Source of the DNA: Gekko japonicus
Taxonomy: Eukaryota
DNA length: 64,000 bases
NCBI RefSeq assembly: GCF_001447785.1
Contig: NW_015161948.1
Span: forward strand, 1,203,556 to 1,267,555
Reading direction: 5' to 3'
The first letter of the stretch is position 1. The number at the start of each line of letters is the position of its first letter. Of this stretch, positions 1,760-54,385 are shown in pieces. A model generated the notes under the pieces. It did no database searches, was not told the origin of the DNA, and saw only the letters and a program-made list of their open reading frames with translations. Made by a program: the position numbers and the translations under genes.

Positions 1760-2600
1760 CCTCAACCCAAAGCTCGACAGAACAGCTCCATTTTACAAGC
1801 ACTGCAGAATTGTAACAGATCCTGTTGGGCCCTGATCTCAACTGGGAGCTTGTTCCACCAGGCAGGGGCCAGGGCCAAAAAAGCCCTGGCCGAGGCTAAC
1901 TGGATGTCCTTTGGGCCAGGGACAGTTAAGACATGTTGATCACTGGAGCATAGGGCTCTGTGGGGCACATATGGGGAGAGGCGGTCCCAAAGATATGAGG
2001 GTCCCTGGCTGCATAGGGCTTTGAAGGTCAGCACCAAAACCTTGAACTGGACCCGGGACTCTATTGGAAGCAACCACAGTTGGCACAGCACGGGCTGAAT
2101 GCGTGCCTGCACAGACTTCGCTGGTAACACCTGTGCTGCTGCATTCTGCACTAGCTGAAGTGTCCAGGTAAAGTACAAGGGTAGCCCTGCGTAGAGCGAG
2201 TTACAATAATCCATTCTGGTAGTGACTATTGCATAAGACACTGTAGCCAAGTCCTGAGAAGTGAGATAGGGAACCAGTTGCTTGATCAGTCGGAGATGAT
2301 AAAGGGCTGATTGAACAATGGTGGCATCCAGAACCACTCCTAAGCCCTTCACCCTCAGCGATGGCACCGTGTCCTGTGGAGTTGGATTCCCGTTTCCTAA
2401 GCCCTTCACCCTCAGCGATGGCACCAACGGTGTCCTGTGGAGTTGGATTCCCGTTCCCAGATTCCCGTGGCCTAGGTACAGGACCTCCCTCTTCATTGGA
2501 TTCAGTTTCAGTTGACTCTGTTGAAACCATTCAGCCACAGGCTGTAATGCCCTGTTCAATACCTCCAGAGCGGAGTCTGTCCATCCATCAAACAGATATT
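1760..2600 (-). mobile_element. L2 LINE 3' fragment (RT C-terminal region)
   Basis: ORF 1762-2559 has LKLNPMKREVL, ALYHLRLIKQLVPYL, TRMDYCNSLYAGLP and LQLVQNAAAQV, typical of L2; internal ~58-bp tandem duplication at 2339-2457. Confidence 0.9.
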
Positions 2601-15947: not shown

Positions 15948-16559
15948 CATCCCCCCAGATTTAAAATTGTCACATTCCGCTGCCCTTGTCTCTGCTTTTC
16001 CAGTAAAGCTAACACTCAAAAGGCCACAGAAACTAAGCTCACCATTGTGAACTGCTTAAGTCAACTAACTGGGCTAACAACATTTATCATTCTACATTAG
16101 ATGAAGTTGTTGCTCATTATCTTAAGATCACAAGTGTCCACAGAACTTCCTGATCATGTGTGTCTCCCCTCCCCCACAAAAAAAGAGAGGGCGGCTTCCA
16201 ATCTGAAATATCTGCTTGTCAAGATGTGCTCAACTCACTACTGCTCCGCTACATACTAACACTGCACGGCCAACCAAGTTTAAACGGCAAGCTTAAACTC
16301 TTTTGCAAACGCAACAGACCAGTTCAGAGAGGAAAACAACGAGAACTTAACCGTGACTGCCACCGCTCACCTTACAAAGCCTCTCCAAATGAGGGCCGAA
16401 AATCTTTCCCGTTATGAAAAAGATTAAATTTATGGCCCAGGGATTATCACCACGTGAACCAAAAACAGGATTTACACAAACGGTAGGTCGATGGCAGCTG
16501 GCTGCAATGGACCACACGAGACTTACAAAGAGACGTTAAAGAACATAGGATGCGTTTGC

Positions 16560-17580
16560 CGGCCAGCAGAGAGACCGGCCGTGTTTTTTGAACGGGGAAG
16601 GAACGAGGGTTAGGGCAGGCGGGACGTCCCAGCAGCCAGCACTCCCCAGCCAGCCAGCCCGCCCCAGAGAAGCCCGCGACCGCCAGCCTCGCAAGACAGC
16701 AGCGCCTCTCTTCCGCCTCCGGAGCATCCTCCTCATCACTCGCGGGGCGGCGGCGGCGCTCGCGTACCTTGATGCGCTCCCGGCACTGGGACGGTGTCCG
16801 CTCGTAGCCCAGCTCCGCCAGGGCCCGGGAGACGCGCTCGTACATGGCGGGCCCGGGGGCCTTGCTGCCGAAGACGGTGCCGGCGCCCTCCAACTGCTGG
16901 TAGCGCGCCTCCACCAGCCGCTCGTTGCCCCACACGGCGATCAGCGCGTTGGTCTCAGCCGGCGTCCACGACATGCCCCGGCAGGCGGCCGTCGTGGCGG
17001 TGCCGCCGGGCGAGAAGGAGACGGACGGCGAGGCTCCGCCACGGCCCCCGGCGCCGCCGCCACAGCCTCCNNNNNNNNNNNNNNNNNNNNNNNNNNNNNN
17101 NNNNNNNNNNNNNNNNNNNGAGGAGCCACAGGGCGCCGCCATATTGGAGCTGCCGAGCCGAGCGGGCGGAAGTGACGGAGGAGCGCGAGCGGGCGGGGCT
17201 TCCGCCAGGAGGCGACGAGCCAGGAGCGAAGCGGGAGAATAGAAAAGGGGAGAGAGAGAGAGAAGCGGCGGGAGGCGCGCGTGCGGTGTCGGTTCAGCTG
17301 GCGAATCGGGCGGAATGTGTCAGCGCCACAACGGCAACAGTCGAGGGCCATCGTTGGGGGAGTGAGGCGGTCTGAGGTGAGGCCGCTTCTCGCTCAGGTT
17401 CGTTACAAGATGGGGCTTCTTCTTCTGGGTCGGGCCGTCACATACACACACACATATCCCCGGTCAGAAATGAAACGCAGAGCGGATTTGAAGGGGGGAG
17501 GCGGCCCTGTGAAGGGGCTGCAAAAGGCCGGCTGTTTACCTCAGTGTATCGCCCCCCCCCCCGAACGACCGTGGTTGGTT
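16560..17580. promoter_or_regulatory. CpG island / MSANTD2 promoter
   Basis: Very GC- and CpG-rich block spanning exon 1; ETS-like GCGGAAGTG (~17167), GC boxes (GGGCGGGG), YY1-like AATATGGCGGC at the ATG (minus) and CAAGATGG at ~17406 (plus). Confidence 0.85.
16768..17142 (-). CDS. MSANTD2: MSANTD2 coding exon 1 (start codon and Myb/SANT-like domain; contains an assembly gap)
   Basis: MAAPCGS...SVSFSPGG...[73 protein letters not shown], then donor GTACGC (GT at 16767-16766); matches vertebrate MSANTD2; N gap at 17071-17119. Confidence 0.96.
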
Positions 17581-19361: not shown

Positions 19362-21403
19362 GTGAAGAATAGATTCAAGGGTCTGGATTTGATAGATAGA
19401 GTGCCTGAAGAACTATGGACAGAGGTTCGTGACATCGTACAGGAGGCAGCAATCACCACCATCCCAAAGAAAAAGAAATGTAAGAAAGCAAAGTGGCTTT
19501 CTGATGAGGCTTTACAAATAGCAGAGGAAAGAAGGAAAGCGAAAGGCAAAGGCGAAAAGGAAAGATTTACCCAACTGAACGCAGATTTCCAGAGAACAGC
19601 AAGGAGAGATAAGGAGGCCTTCCTGAATGAACAGTGCAAAGTAATAGAAGAAAACAATAGAATGGGAAGGACTAGAGATCTCTTCAAGAAAGTTGGAGAA
19701 ATCAAGGGAGCGTTCCATGCAAAGCTGGCCATGATAAAGGACAAAAACGGTAGGGACCTAACAGAAGCAGAAGAGATTAGGAAAAGATGGCAAGAATACA
19801 CAGAAGAACTATACAAGAAAGACCTCGATGTCCTTGACAACCACGACGGTATAATCACTGACCTCGAGCCAGACATCCTGGAATGTGAAGTTAAATGGGC
19901 CTTAGAAAGCATTACTAACAACAAAGCTAGTGGAGGTGATGGTATTCCAGTTGAGCTATTCAAAGTCTTAGAAGATGATGCTGTTAAAGTTCTGCACTCC
20001 ATTTGCCAGCAAATTTGGAAAACGCAACAGTGGCCACAGGATTGGAAAAGGTCAGTATACATTCCAATCCCAAAGAAGGGCAATGCCAAGGAATGTTCAA
20101 ACTATCGCACAATTGCACTCATATCACACGCTAGCAAGGTCATGCTCAAGATCCTACAAGCTAGGCTTCAACAGTACGTGGATAGAGAACTACCAGAAGT
20201 ACAAGCTGGGTTTCGAAGAGGTAGAGGAACTAGAGATCAAATTGCCAACATTCGCTGGATTATGGAGAAAGCAAGAGAGTACCAGAAAAATATCTACTTC
20301 TGCTTCATTGACTATGCTAAAGCTTTTGACTGTGTGGATCACAACAAACTATGGCAGGTCCTTAAAGAGATGGGAGTACCAGACCACCTCACATGTCTCT
20401 TGAGAAACCTGTATAAGGGCCAAGAAGCGACAGTTAGAACCGGATATGGAACAACTGATTGGTTCAGCATAGGAAAAGGAGTACGACAAGGATGTATATT
20501 GTCACCTTGCTTATTTAATATATATGCAGAGTACATCATGCGAAATGCTGGCCTGGATGAATCACAAGCGGGAATTAAGATTGCTGGGGAAAAGATCAAC
20601 AACCTCAGATATGCAGACGATACCACTCTGATGGCAGAAAGTGAAGAGGACCTCAAGAGCCTCTTGCTCAGGGTAAAAGAGGAGAGCGCAAAAGTGGGCT
20701 TGAAGCTCAACATCAAAAAAACTAAGATCATGGCATCCGGCCCCATGACTCCTTGGCAAATAGAAGGGGAAGCTGTGGAAGTAGTGACAGACTTCACGTT
20801 CCTGGGATCCCAGATCACCGCAGACTGTGACAGCAGTCATGAAATTAAAAGACGCCTGCTCCTTGGGAGGAAAGCGATGGCGAACCTAAACAGCATGATA
20901 AAAAGTAGAGACATCACCCTGCCAACAAAAGTCCGCATGGTCAAAGCAATGGTATTCCCAGTAGTCATGTATGGCTGCGAGAGTTGGACTATAAGGAAGG
21001 CCGAGCGCCGAAGAATAGATTCTTTTGAACTATGGTGCTGGAGAGACGCTTGAGAGTCCCTTGGACTGCAAGAAGATCAAATCAGTCAATCCTAAAAGAA
21101 ATCAACCCTGACTGTTCCCTGGAAGGCCAGATAATGAAACTGAAACTCAAATACTTAATGAAACTGAAGCTCAAATACTTTGGCCACCAAATGAGAAGGG
21201 AGCACTCACTGGAGAAGACCCTGATGCTGGGAAAGATTGAAGGTCAAAGAAGACGGGGACGGCAAAGGATGAGATGGTTAGACAGTGTCATAGATGCAAC
21301 AAACATGAAGTTGAGCAAACTTCAGAGGACGGCGGAAGACTGGAAGGCCTGGCGTGATGTGGTCCATGGGGTCGCGAAGAGTCGGACTCGACTGTGCGAC
21401 TAA
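19362..21403 (+). pseudogene. BovB reverse transcriptase ORF (563 aa open, then frameshifted C-terminus)
   Basis: Motifs NYRTIALISHASK, QAGFRRGRGTRDQI, FIDYAKAFD, GVRQGCILSP and LRYADD; 1-nt frameshift at WCWR (~21045); 24-bp tandem duplication at ~21131-21180. Confidence 0.93.
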
Positions 21404-27724: not shown

Positions 27725-28369
27725 CTGTACAGGAACAGTTTTTGTGAGTCTACTTGTGTTTTGGGTATTCTTTTCTACTATGTCACACAACATTTGTTCA
27801 TGCAATTGCATTTACAACGCCTTATTTTGAATTTTGTTCCTGTACCTTGCCGTACATTTTTGCCCAAGTTGACTTTGCTAATCTAGTTGAACTGAAGCAG
27901 AATGCTGGTATTGCATCGTGTGTACTAAGCCTGGTTCACAAGTGGAGGAGAATAAGGTGGTAGAATGGATAGGCAGAGGTTCACACATTAGTATGCCCCC
28001 ACTGTGTTTAAAACTCCCTGCTAATAGAAAGCCAGCACAGCAAGCAAATAAAAGGGTTAGAACCAGTTTTCTGTTTGCTTAGAGTAGAATCTACCACATG
28101 CCGTTCGAAGTAAAGTAGTTTATTGAGACATTTCAGGTCTCTGCTACTACTTTGTTTTGCACCTATGAACCATGCGTCTGGTACAGTATTTTTGTTGATG
28201 TACCAGTTCCATTTATCATCCTTGGACAGGAATGACTAGAGCCCTTCATCTAATCTTTCTTTTCCCCTTCAGCTTTTAAGGATTTAAAATGGGAAGTGTG
28301 TTTACAAACAGGGTATCTTGCCAGAATATAGGAAACTCTCATGTTGCAATGCTTAACAACCATAATGGG

Positions 28370-30670
28370 ACTGGATAAAAGGACAAGTCCTTTTTTGGAT
28401 CAAAAACTGACTAATAGGAAACAGAGAGTGAGTATAGATAGGCAATTTTCTCAGTGGAGGGTGGTAAGCAGTGGGGTACCACAGGGATCAGTACTGGGTC
28501 TGATGCTTTTTAACTTGTTTATTAATGATTTTGACTTGGGAGTAAGCAGTGAAGTGGCTAAATTTGCAGATGACATAGAATTGTTCCGGGTGGTGAAAAG
28601 CAGGGAGGATTGTGAGGTACTCCAAAGGGATCTGCCGAGGATGGGCGAGTGGGCGTCAACATGGCACATGGGGTTCAATGTGGCCAAGTGGAAAGTGATG
28701 CATATTGGGGCCAAAAATCCTAAATACATGTTTTGCTTTGTTTTCAAATCCCTGGAGGGATATTTTTTTATTTTGCAAATACTACAAAAACTACAAAGAA
28801 ATATTAGGGAAGGGACTACAACTAAGGATAAAGGAAAGCAAACCACACTAAACTAAAACCCCAAGAGGAGGAGGTCTTTTCACTGTTAGTAAAAATGTTA
28901 GTACAATTAGTTTTAATATCACAATATACTTGTAGAGTTCTTGCTTATAACAATTAGTTATTTATATGTTATTTTGTTAGTTGTTATGAGAGAAGTCTCT
29001 GATCATTTTCTTATTCATTGCTTCTAAAGGCCATTTTCCAAGTCCTTCTGCCTTTATTTCGGCTTCCTGTCTCTAAAATCGTATACCACTCTGGCAGGTC
29101 CAGCACCCTTTTCTGCCGCAGAATCCTCATCCGTTCCCGAGGTAGCAGAGTCACTAGACTTCGTTTCTTCCTCTTTGGACTCTTCATCTGTCCCCTGCTG
29201 ACGCCTCAAAAATTCATTAGCTTTAAAAGTGGAGTCTATCATCTCTCTTCTATCATTGATCTTAAAGATGACACCCTCCGGAACCGCCCATCTGTACGAT
29301 ATCCCATTAGTTTGAAGAAAAGAAATTAAGTCCTTATAATTTTTCCTTTTTGGTCTAATTTCAAATAGAATGTCCTTTAAGGTTTTGATGGTTACATTTC
29401 CCATTTTCAGTGGAGTTGCTGANNNNNNNNNNNNNNNNNNNNNNNNNNNNNNNNNNNNNNNNNNNNNNNNNNNNNNNNNNNNNNNNNNNNNNNNNNNNNN
29501 NNNNNNNNNNNNNNNNNNNNNNNNNNNNNNNNNNNNNNNNNNNNNNNNNNNNNNNNNNNNNNNNNNNNNNNNNNNNNNNNNNNNNNNNNNNNNNNNNNNN
29601 NNNNNNNNNNNNNNNNNNNNNNNNNNNNNNNNNNNNNNNNNNNNNNNNNNNNNNNNNNNNNNNNNNNNNNNNNNNNNNNNNNNNNNNNNNNNNNNNNNNN
29701 NNNNNNNNNNNNNNNNNNNNNNNNNNNNNNNNNNNNNNNNNNNNNNNNNNNNNNNNNNNNNNNNNNNNNNNNNNNNNNNNNNNNNNNNNNNNNNNNNNNN
29801 NNNNNNNNNNNNNNNNNNNNNNNNNNNNNNNNNNNNNNNNNNNNNNNNNNNNNNNNNNNNNNNNNNNNNNNNNNNNNNNNNNNNNNNNNNNNNNNNNNNN
29901 NNNNNNNNNNNNNNNNNNNNNNNNNNNNNNNNNNNNNNNNNNNNNNNNNNNNNNNNNNNNNNNNNNNNNNNNNNNNNNNNNNNNNNNNNNNNNNNNNNNN
30001 NNNNNNNNNNNNNNNNNNNNNNNNNNNNNNNNNNNNNNNNNNNNNNNNNNNNNNNNNNNNNNNNNNNNNNNNNNNNNNNNNNNNNNNNNNNNNNNNNNNN
30101 NNNNNNNNNNNNNNNNNNNNNNNNNNNNNNNNNNNNNNNNNNNNNNNNNNNNNNNNNNNNNNNNNNNNNNNNNNNNNNNNNNNNNNNNNNNNNNNNNNNN
30201 NNNNNNNNNNNNNNATAGAGCAGGTAGAGAAAGAAGTGCTTTTCTCCCTTTCTCACAATACAAGAACTCATGGGCACTCAACAAAATTGCTGAGCAGTCG
30301 GGTTAGAACAGATAAAAGGAAGTCCTTCTTCACCCAAAGAGTGATTAACACATGGAATTCACTGCCACAGGAAGTGGTGGCAGCTACAAGCCTGGACGGC
30401 TTCAAGAGGTAATTAGATAAACATATGGAGCAGAGGTCCATCAGCGGCTATTAGCCTCAAGGTATAGATAGGAACTCTCAGGCTGGGGCAAGTGATGCAC
30501 TGTATTCTTGGTGTCTGGGGGGGGGAGGCAACAGTGGGAGGGCTCTTAGTGTCCTGGCCCCACTGCTGGACCTCCTGATGGCACCTGGTATTTTGGCCAC
30601 TGTGTGACACAGAGTGTTGGACTGGATGGGCCATTGGCCTGATCCAACATTGGATTCTCTTATGTTCTTA
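28370..30670 (+). mobile_element. CR1 LINE 3' portion interrupted by an L1-type insertion and an assembly gap
   Basis: SGVPQGSVLG, VAKFADD and KVMHIGAKN at 28370-28730; CR1 resumes after the gap at 30215 and runs to the CTCTTATGTTCTT tail. Confidence 0.9.
28731..29422 (-). mobile_element. ORF1-only L1-type (HAL1-like) element, 3' half (5' part lies in the gap)
   Basis: L1 ORF1 C-terminal-like peptide ...FEIRPKRKNYKDLISFLQTNGISYRWAVPEGVIFKI... with stop at 29054, ~320 nt 3' UTR, AATAAA and A-rich tail; homologous to 52261-53848. Confidence 0.75.
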
Positions 30671-50189: not shown

Positions 50190-51860
50190 TGGCACTCCAG
50201 TATGCTCCGAGGATCCGGAGGTGACATCAAATCAGGTAGCTGCCCAAATGGTATCCCTATCCAGAGCTCCAAAGGACTGAGATTTTACAATCAGGATAAA
50301 ACAAGAACTCCAGATTTTGAAATGCACCTACCCTGAAGACTGCAAGTTGTCAGGGGATTTCAGTGCTGATGAGATTTCCAAGGCACTGAAGGATATCAAG
50401 AATGGAAAGACACCAGGCTTTGACTGCATCCATAAGGAGTTTCTGATCAACAGTGGCACGTTCACTAAGAAGTGACTCACACAGTTTCTCACTGACATAA
50501 GAGCAGGAAGACTCCTAGAGGAATTCAAGAATGCAAAGGTAGTTGCTATTCTGAAACCTGAAAAACCAAAACATCTGGTGGAAAGTTACAGACCTATTTC
50601 CCTTCTGAGCTCCTGTTATAAACTCCTCAAGAGGCTAATCCTGAACAGAATCAGTGACAAAATTAACCAACATGTCCCTGTAGTGCAAGCAGGATCTAGA
50701 CCCCGTCGTAGTTATGAAGACCAGGTTCTCAGCTTAACAACTTTCATTGAGGCAGGGTATCAGAAGTGTCTTAAGCCATTAGCAGTTTTTGTCGATTGGA
50801 CTGCCGCTTATGACACAGTCTGGAGGGATGGTCTGCTGTACAAGTTTTCCTTTCACCTGCAGAACATTATTTTGATTCCTAAATAACATGAGCAATAGGC
50901 CTTTCCAAGTAATTATGGGTCAGTCAGTCAGCAAGCAGAAGAAATGGAATTATGGTCTACCCCAGGGCTCGGTCCTTGCTCCAGTTCTTTTCAATCTATA
51001 CATCTCTGGCGCTCCTGATATCCAGGAAGATTGCTTATGTCGATGACATGATGATTGCAGTAAGGCATAACTCAATTGAAAGGACTGAGGAAATACTGAC
51101 TAGGGACCTTGACATTTTTGCTGACTACTACTGTAAATGGTGGCTCATTTCAGGTCCAGGAAAAGCAGAATGCTCCTGTTTCTATTTCAATAACAATCTT
51201 ACCAACCATGAACTGAATGTCCACCTTAATGGCACCTGACAACACACAACCATACATCTAAGTACCTTGGTATTACCCTGGACAGGACCTTGAGCTACAA
51301 ACACCATCTTACCAATGTAGCAAATACACACACAAAACAACATTCTCCAAAAATTATGTGGTACAACTTGAGGTGCGTCTGCTACAACACTTAGATGCTC
51401 AGCTTTGGGGTTGGTATATAGTACTGCAGAATATGGTGCTTCCAAGTGGCTCAACTGCCCCCATGTCCACAAATATGGTGTCCAACTCAATACAACAATA
51501 AGAAACTTCAGCAGATGTATTAAACCCACTCTGACCATCCCAGTTGTGCCACATCGCTCCCCCGTATCTCCAAAGACAGGATGCTTTCCTTCGTGAATAT
51601 AGAAAGATAATTTAAAACAGAGTTGTCCACCCACAAAGACATGGCTGATGCGGGCCTATCCAGACTAAGCAATAGGATCTGCACAAATCCTGCAATCATA
51701 ACATTTCGATCTAGGGAATGAATGGTTGCGAACATGGATGCAAGCAGTTCCACCCAATATCCATAACCTGATAAGTACCAACGAGAGGCCCACAGGATTT
51801 GACATGTCATATAAAGTCTGGAAGACAGCTAATAGAGTACGAACAGGCTTTGGAAAATCT
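50190..51860 (+). mobile_element. Vingi (Ingi-like) LINE RT fossil
   Basis: SYRPISLLSSCYKLL, QAGSRPRRSYEDQV, AVFVDWTAAYDTVW, GLPQGSVLAP, AYVDD, YLGITLDRTL and GLVYSTAEY motifs; many stops and frameshifts. Confidence 0.82.
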
Positions 51861-52260
51861 TTATCATAACTCTTACATTTAGAGTGATTAATATCTTTGT
51901 TTTATAAATAAGAAAATCACAAGTCAAACAAAGTCGAGACTCGCAGTTTAAAACAGTAACCTTATTTTGTGGTACAGTTGCTTTCAGTGCTCACTGTTTT
52001 GTGTCATTTTGGTGCTTTCTAATACAAGTTATTATGTGGTTGGTGCTTTGTTTTTGGGTCTGGATTTCAAGGGATAAATGCCAGTGTACTAGGGTTTGCT
52101 GTGGCCAAATTCAGATATATAAATTACTAATGACAGGGCTCTGGTCATGAGAAGCATTCATAGGCCATTATAATGCTTACCTTACAGGTGTATTCATAAT
52201 GCTTCCATATTATCTACAAAGCTGGAAGTCCTTGGTTCTAAGCCCCTGTTAACTATTTTT

Positions 52261-53848
52261 TAAGCCCCCGGAAGGGATTTTTTATTGATTTTTTAAACAC
52301 TACAAAAACTAGAACAGAAAAAAGGGAAAGGGAAAGCTACATATAAGGGAGAAAGTAAAGAACCCACTACTAACTAAAAACCCAAGAGAGGAGATCTCCA
52401 ACTAGCTTTTTATACTTCATTCAGACTTTTCATCTTTGTACTTCTTATGAACTGTGTCAATCTTTTAACCCTTTTAACCATCCCCAGTTACATTTAATTG
52501 CCCAATAACAGTGCCCCCCATCATCCCCTAGAAACAAAAGTTCTCAAAGGAACAATTCAGAGTCCTTCAGCCTTTACTTCTTCGTCTCTCTCTTCCGCAG
52601 TTTGTAGGAACTTTTCGGGGCTGATGCCCCCTGCTCAGACAAAGAGTCCTCACCAGACGAACCAGTTTCCAGCTCTCCACTGGACTTATCGTCCTCTTCT
52701 TTTTTCTCGTCCTCTGGCCTTCCCAGCTGCTCCTTTAGAAACTCTTGAGCTTTAAGAACAGAGTCAATCTTGACCTTCTTCTCCTTGATCTTGAATATTA
52801 CTCCTTCTGGAAACAGCCATTTATATCCAATTGAGTTTGTTTGGAGGAAAAACACAAGTTCTTTGTATTTCTTTCTGCATTGTCTTACTTCAAATGGAGT
52901 ATGCTTTAGCGTTCTGACAGCATTCTCCCCCACCTTCAGGGGTGTCGCAGAAAAAAAACAGTTTTCTTTTCCAATTTTTGCACTTCTTTCCTCACTATCT
53001 GCGTTGTCTCAGCCATTTCCTTTACTTTCTCAGCATCCTGCTTCATTACTTGAATCAAATCCGTTATTTGCGTTTGTTGAGCAGTAATGCTTGTTGTCAC
53101 AACTTGCAGCTGCTTTTGTTGTGCAGTAATATTCGCTGTTACAACAGACATCTGTTCTTTAAAGACATTGAGCTGTTCCAGGGCGCATAACCTCTGTCAT
53201 CACCTTTGTCGTCTCACTGGTCGTTTCCGGCACCTTCGGGGACTCTAGTTTCGCTTTTAAAAGTTTCTCTTTGTCTCTGTCCCTCTTCCCCGCCATCTTT
53301 TTCTCGTTTGTTTGCTTTCGCAATAAATTTTAAAGTGTCTGAATATGCGCTTATCTGTATAGCTCAATGGATGAGTACTTCTGGGCAATTTCTTGTTTAT
53401 TCGTCCACTCCCTCCCCTTTCGCTCAACGATTTATGGGCATGGGAGGCGTCTCTCCCACCACTCGTTTCTGCCGTTTCACTGCTTTGGGTAAGGAGTGTC
53501 TTTTCGTTTAAAAATCAGTTCTCATTTGACTCAGGTTCATAGTTGGTCTTCCGACCCCTTTTCATTCATCATTTCAAACGCCTTATCTCCTATGCTTGAC
53601 CCGGCTAGCTTCACTTGTACCATCAGGTCTCTCGGCTGGACGGACCACTGGAGCAAGGGGGAGCCTCGATTCTCTGGCATTCGGCCAGAGAAGAGGCTAC
53701 CCCCTCAAAGCTCCTTGGCCAGGTGCCCTTCCCCGGGCTCCTGGGGGAGTTTATGAGCCTGCTCACCCCCTCCGTCCGCCAGAGCACGGAGACACCCCCG
53801 GGAGGTCCAGGAGGTGAGTCTGTGAGCGTGCCGCCATAAACCGGAAGT
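52261..53848 (-). mobile_element. Complete ~1.6-kb ORF1-only L1-type retroelement (HAL1-like)
   Basis: 18-bp TSD CCCCTGTTAACTATTTTT (52243-52260 / 53849-53866) at a TTTTT/AA site; 5' end ACTTCCGGTTTATGGCGGC; CpG-rich 5' UTR; one ORF; AATAAA near the 3' end. Confidence 0.85.
52574..53296 (-). pseudogene. L1 ORF1p-like protein (coiled coil, C-terminal domain and acidic/basic tail; ~240 aa; 2 frameshifts)
   Basis: AAGATGGCG start at 53296: MAGKRDRDKEKLLKAKLESP..., then heptad region LEQLNVFKEQMSVVTANITAQQKQL...VQKLEKK, then SATPLKVG...FEVRQCRKKYKELVFFLQTNSIGYKWLFPEGVIF. Confidence 0.75.
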
Positions 53849-54385
53849 CCCCTGTTAACTATTTTTAATAAATGTCTGAGTAAACTATTTTTAGTTTACC
53901 CCTAAGACCTGCCTAAATATATCTCCACTGAGGCTAATTTGGGAGTGGACCAGTTCTGGAAAATCCTGTATGCCAGATTGTTTAGGTGTTTCAGAATGTG
54001 ACCCTGGCATCAGAGAATGTTGTCAGTTTTCGCCATCCCTTTGCCAAGCTGACATATAGTAATTTAATGCTGGCTTTTATGCTTTTTGAAATCCTTGCAG
54101 TTGTGAGTGACTGCTACTGGTTGATGCTAGATTCTGATAATCCACGTTGCTAAGTATTAAGGTTACTAGCTCTATTTCTTCAGCAAACTGGCTATAATCA
54201 ACGCACAGTGGGACAGTGGGATTGCCCATTTTCTCAGATGAAAATATCTGGTCCTGCTTTACCCTTGTTGCTAGATATCATGCATCTAGAGGAACGGCTG
54301 CTCCCCCAAGGCCTCCATGGAACCTTCAAGCGCAGCAATTGGAGTAGCACCCAAGGACTAGGGGGACGAGGAGATGACAAATCTA

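What the first reader, a model, noticed from the sequence alone, without database searches (positions are those of the whole stretch)
52261..53848. Complete non-autonomous retroelement encoding only an L1 ORF1-like protein (HAL1-like) in a lizard
Seen: a 1.59-kb unit bounded by a perfect 18-bp TSD ending in TTTTT and followed by AA. Its 5' end reads ACTTCCGG-TTT-ATGGCGGC. It has a ~550-nt CpG-rich 5' UTR, a single ORF (53296 to 52574, two frameshifts), a ~310-nt 3' UTR and AATAAA. There is no room for EN/RT. Known: TTTT/AA is the L1 endonuclease target, ETS/YY1-like motifs at the very 5' end are typical of L1 internal promoters, and ORF1-only 'half-L1' (HAL1) elements are described mainly from mammals. 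Inference: an independently derived squamate element that supplies its own ORF1 in cis and borrows ORF2p from autonomous L1s. I cannot tell whether this family is already catalogued.
Basis: partly seen in the sequence, partly recalled or inferred. Interest (0 to 1): 0.82.

Follow-up and report, generated by a model that had tools for sequence, protein, structure and literature searches.

The report
Lizard ORF1-only L1-derived retroelement, damaged copy
This 1.6-kb insert is a real but damaged copy of a very abundant, transcribed lizard retroelement family that keeps only the first gene (ORF1) of an L1 element and has no reverse transcriptase, much like mammalian "half-L1" (HAL1) elements.

Summary
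There is a perfect 18-bp target-site duplication and an L1-type TT|AAAAA insertion site. The unit has the 5' terminus ACTTCCGGT..ATGGCG, a 552-nt 5'UTR, one broken ORF, a 313-nt 3'UTR and AATAAA 20 nt from its end. There is no room for EN/RT.

The ORF belongs to the L1 ORF1p lineage. Its C-terminal domain finds 142 relatives; every one with a species name is from a squamate. Their profile matches human L1 ORF1p at E 6.5e-15. The predicted fold of the window's own domain hits only L1 ORF1p C-terminal domains among the top ten.

It is a family trait, not a one-off deletion:
- A second, old-diverged copy at 28745-29422 has the same layout, ORF stop followed by about 310 nt and the element end.
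- Summed DNA-contig depth over the element is 600 to 10,000 times that of the flanks.
- RNA reads cover the element but not the flanks.

One correction: this copy is not complete. The second "frameshift" is the junction of an internal deletion that removed the whole RRM domain. The first break is a 5-nt gap.

Borrowing ORF2p from autonomous L1s is inferred, not tested. The scan's first readers noted many similar ORF1-only units elsewhere in this genome. I found no open paper describing them in squamates. I rate it a new member of a known kind, of moderate interest.

The parts
53849..53866 (-). 5' copy of the target-site duplication (18 bp). In element sense it begins AAAAA and is preceded by TT.
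53830..53848 (-). 5' terminus of the element, reading ACTTCCGG-TTT-ATGGCGGC: an ETS-type motif and a YY1-type motif. The same two blocks form the published 5' consensus of Anolis clade-1 L1, but here they are spaced more closely.
   Evidence: PMC5381506
53297..53848 (-). 5'UTR, 552 nt with 25 CpG. The first ~200 nt are GC-rich.
53162..53296 (-). ORF piece 1: the N-terminus, from an ATG in a good start context. The frame is lost at 53179/53180, where 13 of 35 RNA reads carry 5 more letters.
52958..53178 (-). ORF piece 2: the coiled-coil region. It aligns to residues 39-88 of the relative P0001.
52951..52957 (-). Junction of the internal deletion: a run of T between the two sides. Relatives carry the RRM domain (about 90 codons) here, and the two sides are out of frame in this copy.
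   Evidence: (loose ends at 52950 and 52952-52958)
52574..52951 (-). ORF piece 3: the L1 ORF1p-type C-terminal domain, followed by an acidic/Ser-rich tail and a basic end, with the stop at 52576-52574.
52261..52573 (-). 3'UTR, 313 nt, with no ORF longer than 30 aa and no EN/RT.
52261..52395 (-). Pyrimidine-rich 3'-terminal block (66% C+T). It is 79% identical between the two copies even though synonymous sites are saturated. It does not fold better than shuffled sequence.
52281..52286 (-). AATAAA polyadenylation signal, 20 nt before the element's end.
52243..52260 (-). 3' copy of the target-site duplication.
28745..29422 (-). Second, diverged copy of the family. An intact 122-codon C-terminal part of the ORF is followed by a ~310-nt 3'UTR and an A-rich tail. 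Upstream it is cut by an N-run (29423-30213, not filled).

Best explanation
Window 52261-53848 (minus strand) is a dead copy of a high-copy, recently active, transcribed non-autonomous non-LTR retrotransposon family of a lizard. The family unit consists of an L1-type 5' terminus and internal promoter, a ~550-nt 5'UTR, and a single gene for an L1 ORF1p-type protein (coiled coil, RRM, C-terminal domain). A ~310-nt pyrimidine-rich 3'UTR, AATAAA and poly(A) follow. It has no endonuclease or reverse transcriptase.

Shown here:
- the architecture
- the ORF1p homology
- the L1-type insertion signature
- the repetitiveness and the presence of RNA
- long purifying selection on the ORF

Inferred: family RNAs are polyadenylated, coated by their own ORF1p in cis, and copied into TT|AAAA sites by ORF2p from autonomous L1 elements of the same genome through target-primed reverse transcription. 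This is the model proposed for mammalian HAL1.

This particular copy carries a 5-nt gap and an out-of-frame internal deletion that removed the RRM, so it cannot make functional ORF1p.
For: Insertion signature:
- Perfect 18-bp TSD and a TT|AAAAA site.
- At the 3' end, 123 RNA reads run into 13 or more T on the + strand, which is poly(A) in element sense.

ORF1p homology:
- A profile of the C-terminal domains of the two window copies finds 142 relatives. Most are ~300-350 aa with the match at their C-terminus.
- All seven relatives that carry a species name are from squamates: Gekko (two proteins), Eublepharis, Phrynocephalus and Sceloporus.
- 17 of 61 full-length relatives hit Pfam Transposase_22, best E 8e-8.
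- Their profile hits human L1 ORF1p 2YKP/2YKO at E 6.5e-15 across the coiled-coil end, RRM and CTD, and 2LDY at 2.9e-13.
- An AF2 model of the window's own domain has core pLDDT above 95. Its ten best PDB matches are all L1 ORF1p CTDs, with probability 1.0 and TM 0.66 to 2JRB.

Family-level evidence:
- Copy 2 (28745-29422) has the same layout. Between the copies pS is 0.81 (saturated) and pN is 0.31; identity by codon position is 0.65/0.73/0.37.
- Summed DNA-contig word depth is 46,000-780,000 inside the element and 74-94 in the flanks, with sharp edges at both ends. 5,333 contig pieces were laid, 1,137 of them at 99% identity or more.
- RNA reads cover the element and the flanks have none.
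- None of the best-supported loose ends (the 24 listed of 412) leads into foreign sequence after the ORF stop. The ones listed there are homologous variants clipped at indels.

Literature (PMC5381506):
- The 5' consensus of Anolis clade-1 L1 is GACTTCCGGTG-N8-ATGGCG.
- Lizard L1 3'UTRs carry C/T-rich tracts and end in AATAAA plus poly(A).
Against: - The window's own ORF pieces get no Pfam hit, so homology rests on transitive profile and fold evidence.
- No autonomous partner L1 was seen. The window's only RT ORF is not L1-like by my reading.
- This copy's own A-tail is at most 5-6 nt.
- The tool warns that summed depth is not a copy number.
- RNA reads lie equally on both strands, so self-driven transcription cannot be told from read-through.
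Confidence: 0.8

Rival explanations
1. ORF1-only copies are recurrent dead-on-arrival by-products of autonomous L1 RNAs, made by internal deletion, premature polyadenylation or splicing. On this reading they are not a self-propagating ORF1-only lineage.
For: Without a census I cannot show that ORF1-only masters exist. The middle of the 3'UTR does not align between the two copies, so a shared ORF2-loss junction is not demonstrated.
Against: - Two copies separated by saturated synonymous divergence share the stop-codon context, the 3'UTR length (313 vs ~310 nt) and the terminal block.
- More than 1,000 contig pieces are at least 99% identical to this unit.
- Depth over the 3'UTR equals or exceeds depth over the ORF, and no listed break leads into ORF2.
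Confidence: 0.1
2. The family is mobilised by a LINE clade other than L1 (such as CR1, L2 or BovB/RTE, all present in this genome), through recognition of its conserved 3'-terminal block.
For: The last 135 nt are more conserved than synonymous sites. This copy has almost no A-tail. BovB-like and CR1/L2-like RT remnants lie in the window.
Against: - The 18-bp TSD, the TT|AAAAA site and AATAAA 20 nt from the end fit L1, as do the poly(A) run-ons in reads.
- The terminal block has no structure better than shuffled sequence.
- C/T-rich 3'UTRs are themselves a lizard L1 trait (PMC5381506).
Confidence: 0.06
3. It is a processed pseudogene of a host gene domesticated from L1 ORF1, in the manner of L1TD1.
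For: ETS and YY1 motifs at a 5' end are also typical of housekeeping promoters. The unit has an mRNA-like layout with AATAAA. RNA is present.
Against: - Summed depth is hundreds to thousands of times the flank depth.
- There are several subfamilies, and a second diverged copy lies 23 kb away.
- The scan's first readers noted dozens of such units in this genome (unchecked).
Confidence: 0.03
4. It is a single L1 copy that lost ORF2 by a deletion after insertion.
For: This copy does carry an internal deletion, though it is in ORF1.
Against: Copy 2 has the same ORF1-stop-to-3'-end structure. The repeat depth is continuous across the ORF/3'UTR boundary.
Confidence: 0.01

Closest known systems
Mammalian HAL1 ('half-L1') elements (Smit 1999; Bao & Jurka 2010, as cited in PMC5753468)
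   Same: It is a non-autonomous L1 derivative that encodes only ORF1p, is multi-copy, and shows L1-type insertion hallmarks. HAL1s are known to have arisen several times independently.
   Different: - The host is a squamate. HAL1 is described from mammals, and I found no open paper on squamate ones.
- The ORF1 belongs to a squamate-wide branch with a YRW..PEG motif in the CTD.
- It appears far more abundant than lizard L1 families are reported to be (PMC5381506).
- Whether it descends from a lizard L1 was not tested.
Autonomous lizard L1, clade 1 of Anolis (Boissinot & Sookdeo 2016, PMC5381506)
   Same: - The 5' terminus has the ACTTCCGGT and ATGGCG blocks.
- The ORF is A-rich (36.8% A).
- ORF1p has coiled coil, RRM and CTD in relatives.
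- The 3'UTR is C/T-rich, with AATAAA and poly(A).
   Different: - There is no ORF2.
- The 5'UTR is shorter (552 nt).
- The spacing between the two 5' motifs is 3 nt rather than about 9.
- The unit is 1.6-1.9 kb against 5.4-6.4 kb.
Drosophila HeT-A and other gag-only telomeric non-LTR elements (PMC13534243 uses the term 'ORF1-only')
   Same: A non-LTR element that keeps only the first ORF and depends on a partner's RT.
   Different: It belongs to the Jockey clade, has a different ORF1 type, and targets telomeres. It is an analogy only.
L1TD1, a domesticated L1 ORF1 gene of mammals (PMC4161310)
   Same: A protein of L1 ORF1 origin without ORF2.
   Different: L1TD1 is a single-copy host gene. This is a TSD-bounded, high-copy repeat.

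Membership tests
HAL1-type ORF1-only L1 derivative | Encodes a protein homologous to L1 ORF1p | tested here: met
   A profile of 61 relatives matches human L1 ORF1p at E 6.5e-15. Pfam Transposase_22 hits 17 of 61 relatives. The fold of the window's own CTD matches L1 ORF1p CTDs.
HAL1-type ORF1-only L1 derivative | No endonuclease or reverse-transcriptase ORF between the ORF1 stop and the 3' end | tested here: met
   The 3'UTR is 313 nt with no ORF longer than 30 aa. Copy 2 is the same.
HAL1-type ORF1-only L1 derivative | The architecture is shared by a multi-copy family and is not a one-off deletion | tested here: met
   There is a second diverged copy. Summed contig depth is 600-10,000 times the flank depth with sharp edges, and no listed break leads into ORF2. 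No whole-genome census was made.
HAL1-type ORF1-only L1 derivative | L1-type insertion hallmarks: TSD, TT|AAAA site, AATAAA and poly(A) | tested here: met
   Poly(A) is seen in run-on reads, but this copy's own tail is at most 5-6 A.
HAL1-type ORF1-only L1 derivative | Derived from, and mobilised in trans by, an autonomous L1 of the same genome | not testable with these tools
The only link is that the 5' motif matches the published Anolis L1 consensus.
L1 ORF1p (type II: coiled coil + RRM + CTD) | The window's own pieces reach Pfam Transposase_22 or Tnp_22_dsRBD | tested here: not met
   There were no Pfam hits for the N-terminal or CTD pieces, and only weak coiled-coil-type hits for the middle piece.
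L1 ORF1p (type II: coiled coil + RRM + CTD) | RRM domain present | tested here: not met
   The RRM is absent from this copy. Relatives and reads carry it between the two sides joined at 52950/52958. In copy 2 this region is hidden by the N-run.
L1 ORF1p (type II: coiled coil + RRM + CTD) | CTD fold | tested here: met
   The ten best Foldseek matches in the PDB are all L1 ORF1p CTDs, with probability 1.0 and E 0.01-0.1.
Processed pseudogene of a host gene | Low copy number tracing to one intron-bearing parent gene | tested here: not met
   The repeat is high-depth, with pieces at 90-100% identity, and there are two old-diverged subfamilies.

The most novel reading that the evidence does not exclude
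Squamates carry an old, still active ORF1-only L1 lineage, a HAL1 counterpart that arose outside mammals. Its ORF1 has stayed under purifying selection, and in this genome it outnumbers by orders of magnitude the low-copy autonomous L1 families it depends on. RRM-less variants like this copy may ride on it as second-order parasites. To my knowledge of the open literature it has not been described.
Probability: 0.4. Interest if true: 0.65.

Novelty: new member of a known kind. Interest (0 to 1): 0.55.

Why it matters
Non-mammalian vertebrates are described as holding many L1 families, each with few copies (PMC5381506). A non-autonomous ORF1-only derivative at roughly a thousand copies or more would show that L1 machinery in a lizard can drive large amplifications, just not of L1 itself.

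It would also give a second, independent natural case for asking why keeping ORF1p in cis helps a parasite of L1. That bears on how cis-preference works, and it can be tested by comparing selection on ORF1 in HAL1-like and autonomous lineages.

For annotation it matters because gene predictors already list relatives as host proteins. Two Gekko relatives are named 'apolipoprotein A-IV-like'.

Tried and rejected
- Pfam on the three ORF pieces found nothing useful.
- Word-based protein searches with the CTD piece and with P0001 found nothing, or only the query itself.
Genomic context in other species is therefore unknown.
- Bao & Jurka 2010 is not held. The supplement with Anolis L1 consensus sequences is not held either, so I could not compare with a named L1 family.
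- Folding the conserved 3'-terminal 135 nt gave z-scores of +1.9 and -1.1 against shuffles, so there is no support for a structured tail.
- Rfam gave one sub-threshold chance hit.
- Search of earlier findings by sequence was blank.
- Looking for an L1 ORF2 in the window turned up only one RT ORF. I read it as BovB/RTE-like.
- tblastn of all 143 fetched proteins against the window found only the two copies, plus one unrelated match at 1900-2571 to a zinc-finger protein.
- Rejected as foreign junctions: the loose ends at 52396/52397, 52533/52537 and 52581. Read by eye, they are homologous variants clipped at small indels.

I did not fill the N-run in copy 2. I built no consensus and no mended ORF.

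Full report
**What is in the sequence.**
Read on the minus strand, the unit runs from 53848 to 52261 (1,588 nt). It lies between two perfect 18-bp direct repeats at 53849-53866 and 52243-52260. About 5e-5 such repeats would be expected by chance in 2.5 kb.
In element sense the repeat begins AAAAA and the base pair before the 5' copy is TT, the site cut by L1 endonuclease.
- The first bases are ACTTCCGG TTT ATGGCGGC.
- A 552-nt leader follows. Only its first ~200 nt are GC-rich (0.64-0.65), and it holds 25 CpG.
- An ATG at 53296 opens a reading frame that reaches a stop at 52576-52574 only through two frame breaks.
- The 3'UTR is 313 nt and has no ORF longer than 30 aa.
- AATAAA sits at 52286-52281, 20 nt before the end.
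- The A-tail is at most 5-6 nt and merges with the A-run of the target duplication.

**What the protein is.**
Pfam finds nothing in the N-terminal or C-terminal piece, and only weak coiled-coil-type matches in the middle one. A word-based search of the C-terminal piece was blank.
A second copy in the same window supplied a profile (below). With it, an exhaustive HMMER search found 142 relatives at E of 1e-3 or better. The best was P0001 at 8e-27. Most are 300-350 aa, with the match at their C-terminus.
The relatives that carry a species name come from Gekko japonicus (two proteins), Eublepharis macularius, Phrynocephalus forsythii and Sceloporus undulatus.
- Of 61 full-length relatives, 17 hit Pfam Transposase_22, the L1 ORF1 RNA-binding domain, with best E 8e-8.
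- A profile of the 61 hits human L1 ORF1p (2YKP, 2YKO) at E 6.5e-15. The alignment runs through the end of the coiled coil, the RRM and the C-terminal domain. It also hits 2LDY (RRM-CTD of L1 ORF1p) at 2.9e-13.
- An AlphaFold model of the window's own C-terminal piece has pLDDT above 95 over residues 21-80.
- The ten best PDB matches of that model are all L1 ORF1p C-terminal domains, with probability 1.0 and TM 0.66 to mouse 2JRB. The E-values are only 0.01-0.1, as expected for a 65-residue domain.
- The ESM Atlas puts P0001 next to clusters named as L1 RRM-domain or L1TD1-type proteins.
I take the L1 ORF1p homology as established, by transitive sequence evidence plus fold.

**This copy is damaged.**
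The middle piece aligns to residues 39-88 of P0001, which is coiled coil. The last piece aligns from about residue 182 onward. The roughly 90 residues between them in P0001 are the RRM.
The reads show the same gap:
- At 52950, 124 RNA reads with 0.96 agreement leave the window sequence. In element sense they run upstream into a sequence that translates to the end of the family's RRM.
- At 52952-52958, reads and a contig coming from the coiled-coil side run on into a continuation of the coiled coil.
- In the window the two sides are joined by a run of T (52951-52957) and are out of frame.
Nearly all reads near the junction also carry other letters than this copy at 52899, 52903 and 52986. From this I infer that the deletion is private or rare, but I could not count copies that share it.
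The first break lies at 53179/53180, where 13 of 35 RNA reads have five more letters.

**It is a family, and an old one.**
BLASTN of the unit against the window found its last ~130 nt again at 28750-28877, at 79% identity. Upstream of that match lies an intact 122-codon reading frame (29422-29057). It is 52% identical in protein to the C-terminal part of copy 1 and has the same stop-codon context. A ~310-nt 3'UTR and an A-rich tail follow. Further upstream this copy is cut by an N-run (29423-30213), which I left alone.
Between the two copies, synonymous sites are saturated (pS 0.81; third-position identity 0.37), while pN is 0.31. The two lineages therefore separated long ago and the protein stayed under purifying selection.
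The last 135 nt are pyrimidine-rich (66% C+T) and better conserved than synonymous sites. They do not fold better than shuffled sequence. I leave that conservation unexplained beyond noting that C/T-rich 3'UTR tracts are a described trait of lizard L1 (PMC5381506).

**Abundance and RNA.**
Twenty runs from seven studies of one organism hold 0.27-0.56 of the unit's words. I laid four of them on 51761-54348 at 90% identity or more.
- In the DNA run, the unique flanks have a word depth of 74-94.
- The element's bins sum to 46,000-780,000, with sharp steps exactly at 52261 and 53848.
- 5,333 contig pieces were laid, 1,137 of them at least 99% identical.
- The tool warns that summed depth is not a copy number. 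With the flank as an internal yardstick it points to hundreds to thousands of copies, more for the 3' half than the 5' half.
- In two RNA-seq runs the flanks have no reads, while the element has depths of about 20 to 650. Reads lie on both strands about equally, so the direction and the source of transcription stay open.
- At the 3' end, 123 RNA reads run on into 13 or more T on the + strand, which is poly(A) in element sense.
- The best-supported loose ends after the ORF stop (52581, 52533/52537, 52396/52397) are, read by eye, homologous variants clipped at small indels. Among the 24 loose ends listed of 412, none leads into an ORF2.
Independently, the scan's first readers noted dozens of 1.6-2.5-kb ORF1-only units in other windows of this genome. 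Those notes are unchecked leads, but they agree with the depth data.

**Link to L1 beyond the protein.**
Boissinot & Sookdeo (PMC5381506) report three relevant traits:
- Anolis clade-1 L1 families share the 5' terminus GACTTCCGGTG-N8-ATGGCG.
- Lizard L1 ORFs are A-rich.
- All vertebrate L1s end in AATAAA plus poly(A).
The unit has both 5' blocks, spaced more closely, at its very first bases. Its ORF is 36.8% A, and it has the same 3' signals.
No L1 ORF2 is present in the window. The only RT ORF (19362-21053) looks BovB/RTE-like to me. The partner element could therefore not be named.

**Mechanism.**
Shown: the structure, the homology, the L1-type insertion footprint, the repetitiveness, the RNA, and selection on the ORF.
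Inferred by analogy with mammalian HAL1 (PMC5753468, citing Smit 1999 and Bao & Jurka 2010): intact family members are transcribed from the internal 5' promoter and polyadenylated. They are then bound by their own ORF1p and reverse-transcribed at TT|AAAA nicks by ORF2p supplied by autonomous L1s.
This copy is a dead end. Whether its deletion arose before or after insertion is unknown.

**Novelty.**
ORF1-only L1 derivatives are a known kind in mammals. My searches of the open literature found no description of them in squamates. I could not query Repbase or Dfam, so the family may well be catalogued there under an L1 or 'unknown' label.
The reported low copy numbers of lizard L1 families make a high-copy derivative noteworthy, but it is not a new principle.

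**Limits.**

Noticed in passing
window 52261-52395 and 28745-28879: The last ~135 nt of the two copies are 79% identical although synonymous sites in the adjacent ORF are saturated. The block is C/T-rich, contains a small terminal hairpin (CCC..GGG) kept in both copies, and overall does not fold better than shuffled sequence. What constrains it is unexplained.
   Followed up: partly
window 19362-21053 (+): A 563-aa open frame with a strong RVT_1 domain (E 8e-41). By my reading of its motifs it is a BovB/RTE-type LINE, not L1. Its nearest solved structure is L1 ORF2p, but no RTE structure exists for comparison.
   Followed up: partly
window 28341-28856 (+): A 171-aa RT fragment with a FADD motif, of CR1/L2 type by my reading. 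Copy 2's 3' end lies on the opposite strand within it, so copy 2 appears to have inserted into an older LINE.
   Followed up: no
window 16447-17142 (-): A GC-rich ORF with a Myb/SANT-like DNA-binding domain (PF13837, E 4.5e-13), interrupted by a short N-run. It is probably a host gene exon in a CpG island.
   Followed up: no
window 1900-2571 (-): This stretch shows 30% identity (E 1e-12) to residues 562-726 of P0091, a 1,616-aa zinc-finger gene model that also contains an ORF1-like part. The 265-aa ORF here has no Pfam hit.
   Followed up: no
window 51761-51847: Another high-depth repeat (word depth ~15,000 against ~80 in the unique flank) ends about 400 bp from the element. It also has RNA reads.
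   Followed up: no
P0004 and P0027 (Gekko japonicus XP_015280709.1, XP_015276813.1): Relatives of this ORF1p are annotated in RefSeq as 'apolipoprotein A-IV-like'. This is probably a mis-naming caused by the coiled coil.
   Followed up: no
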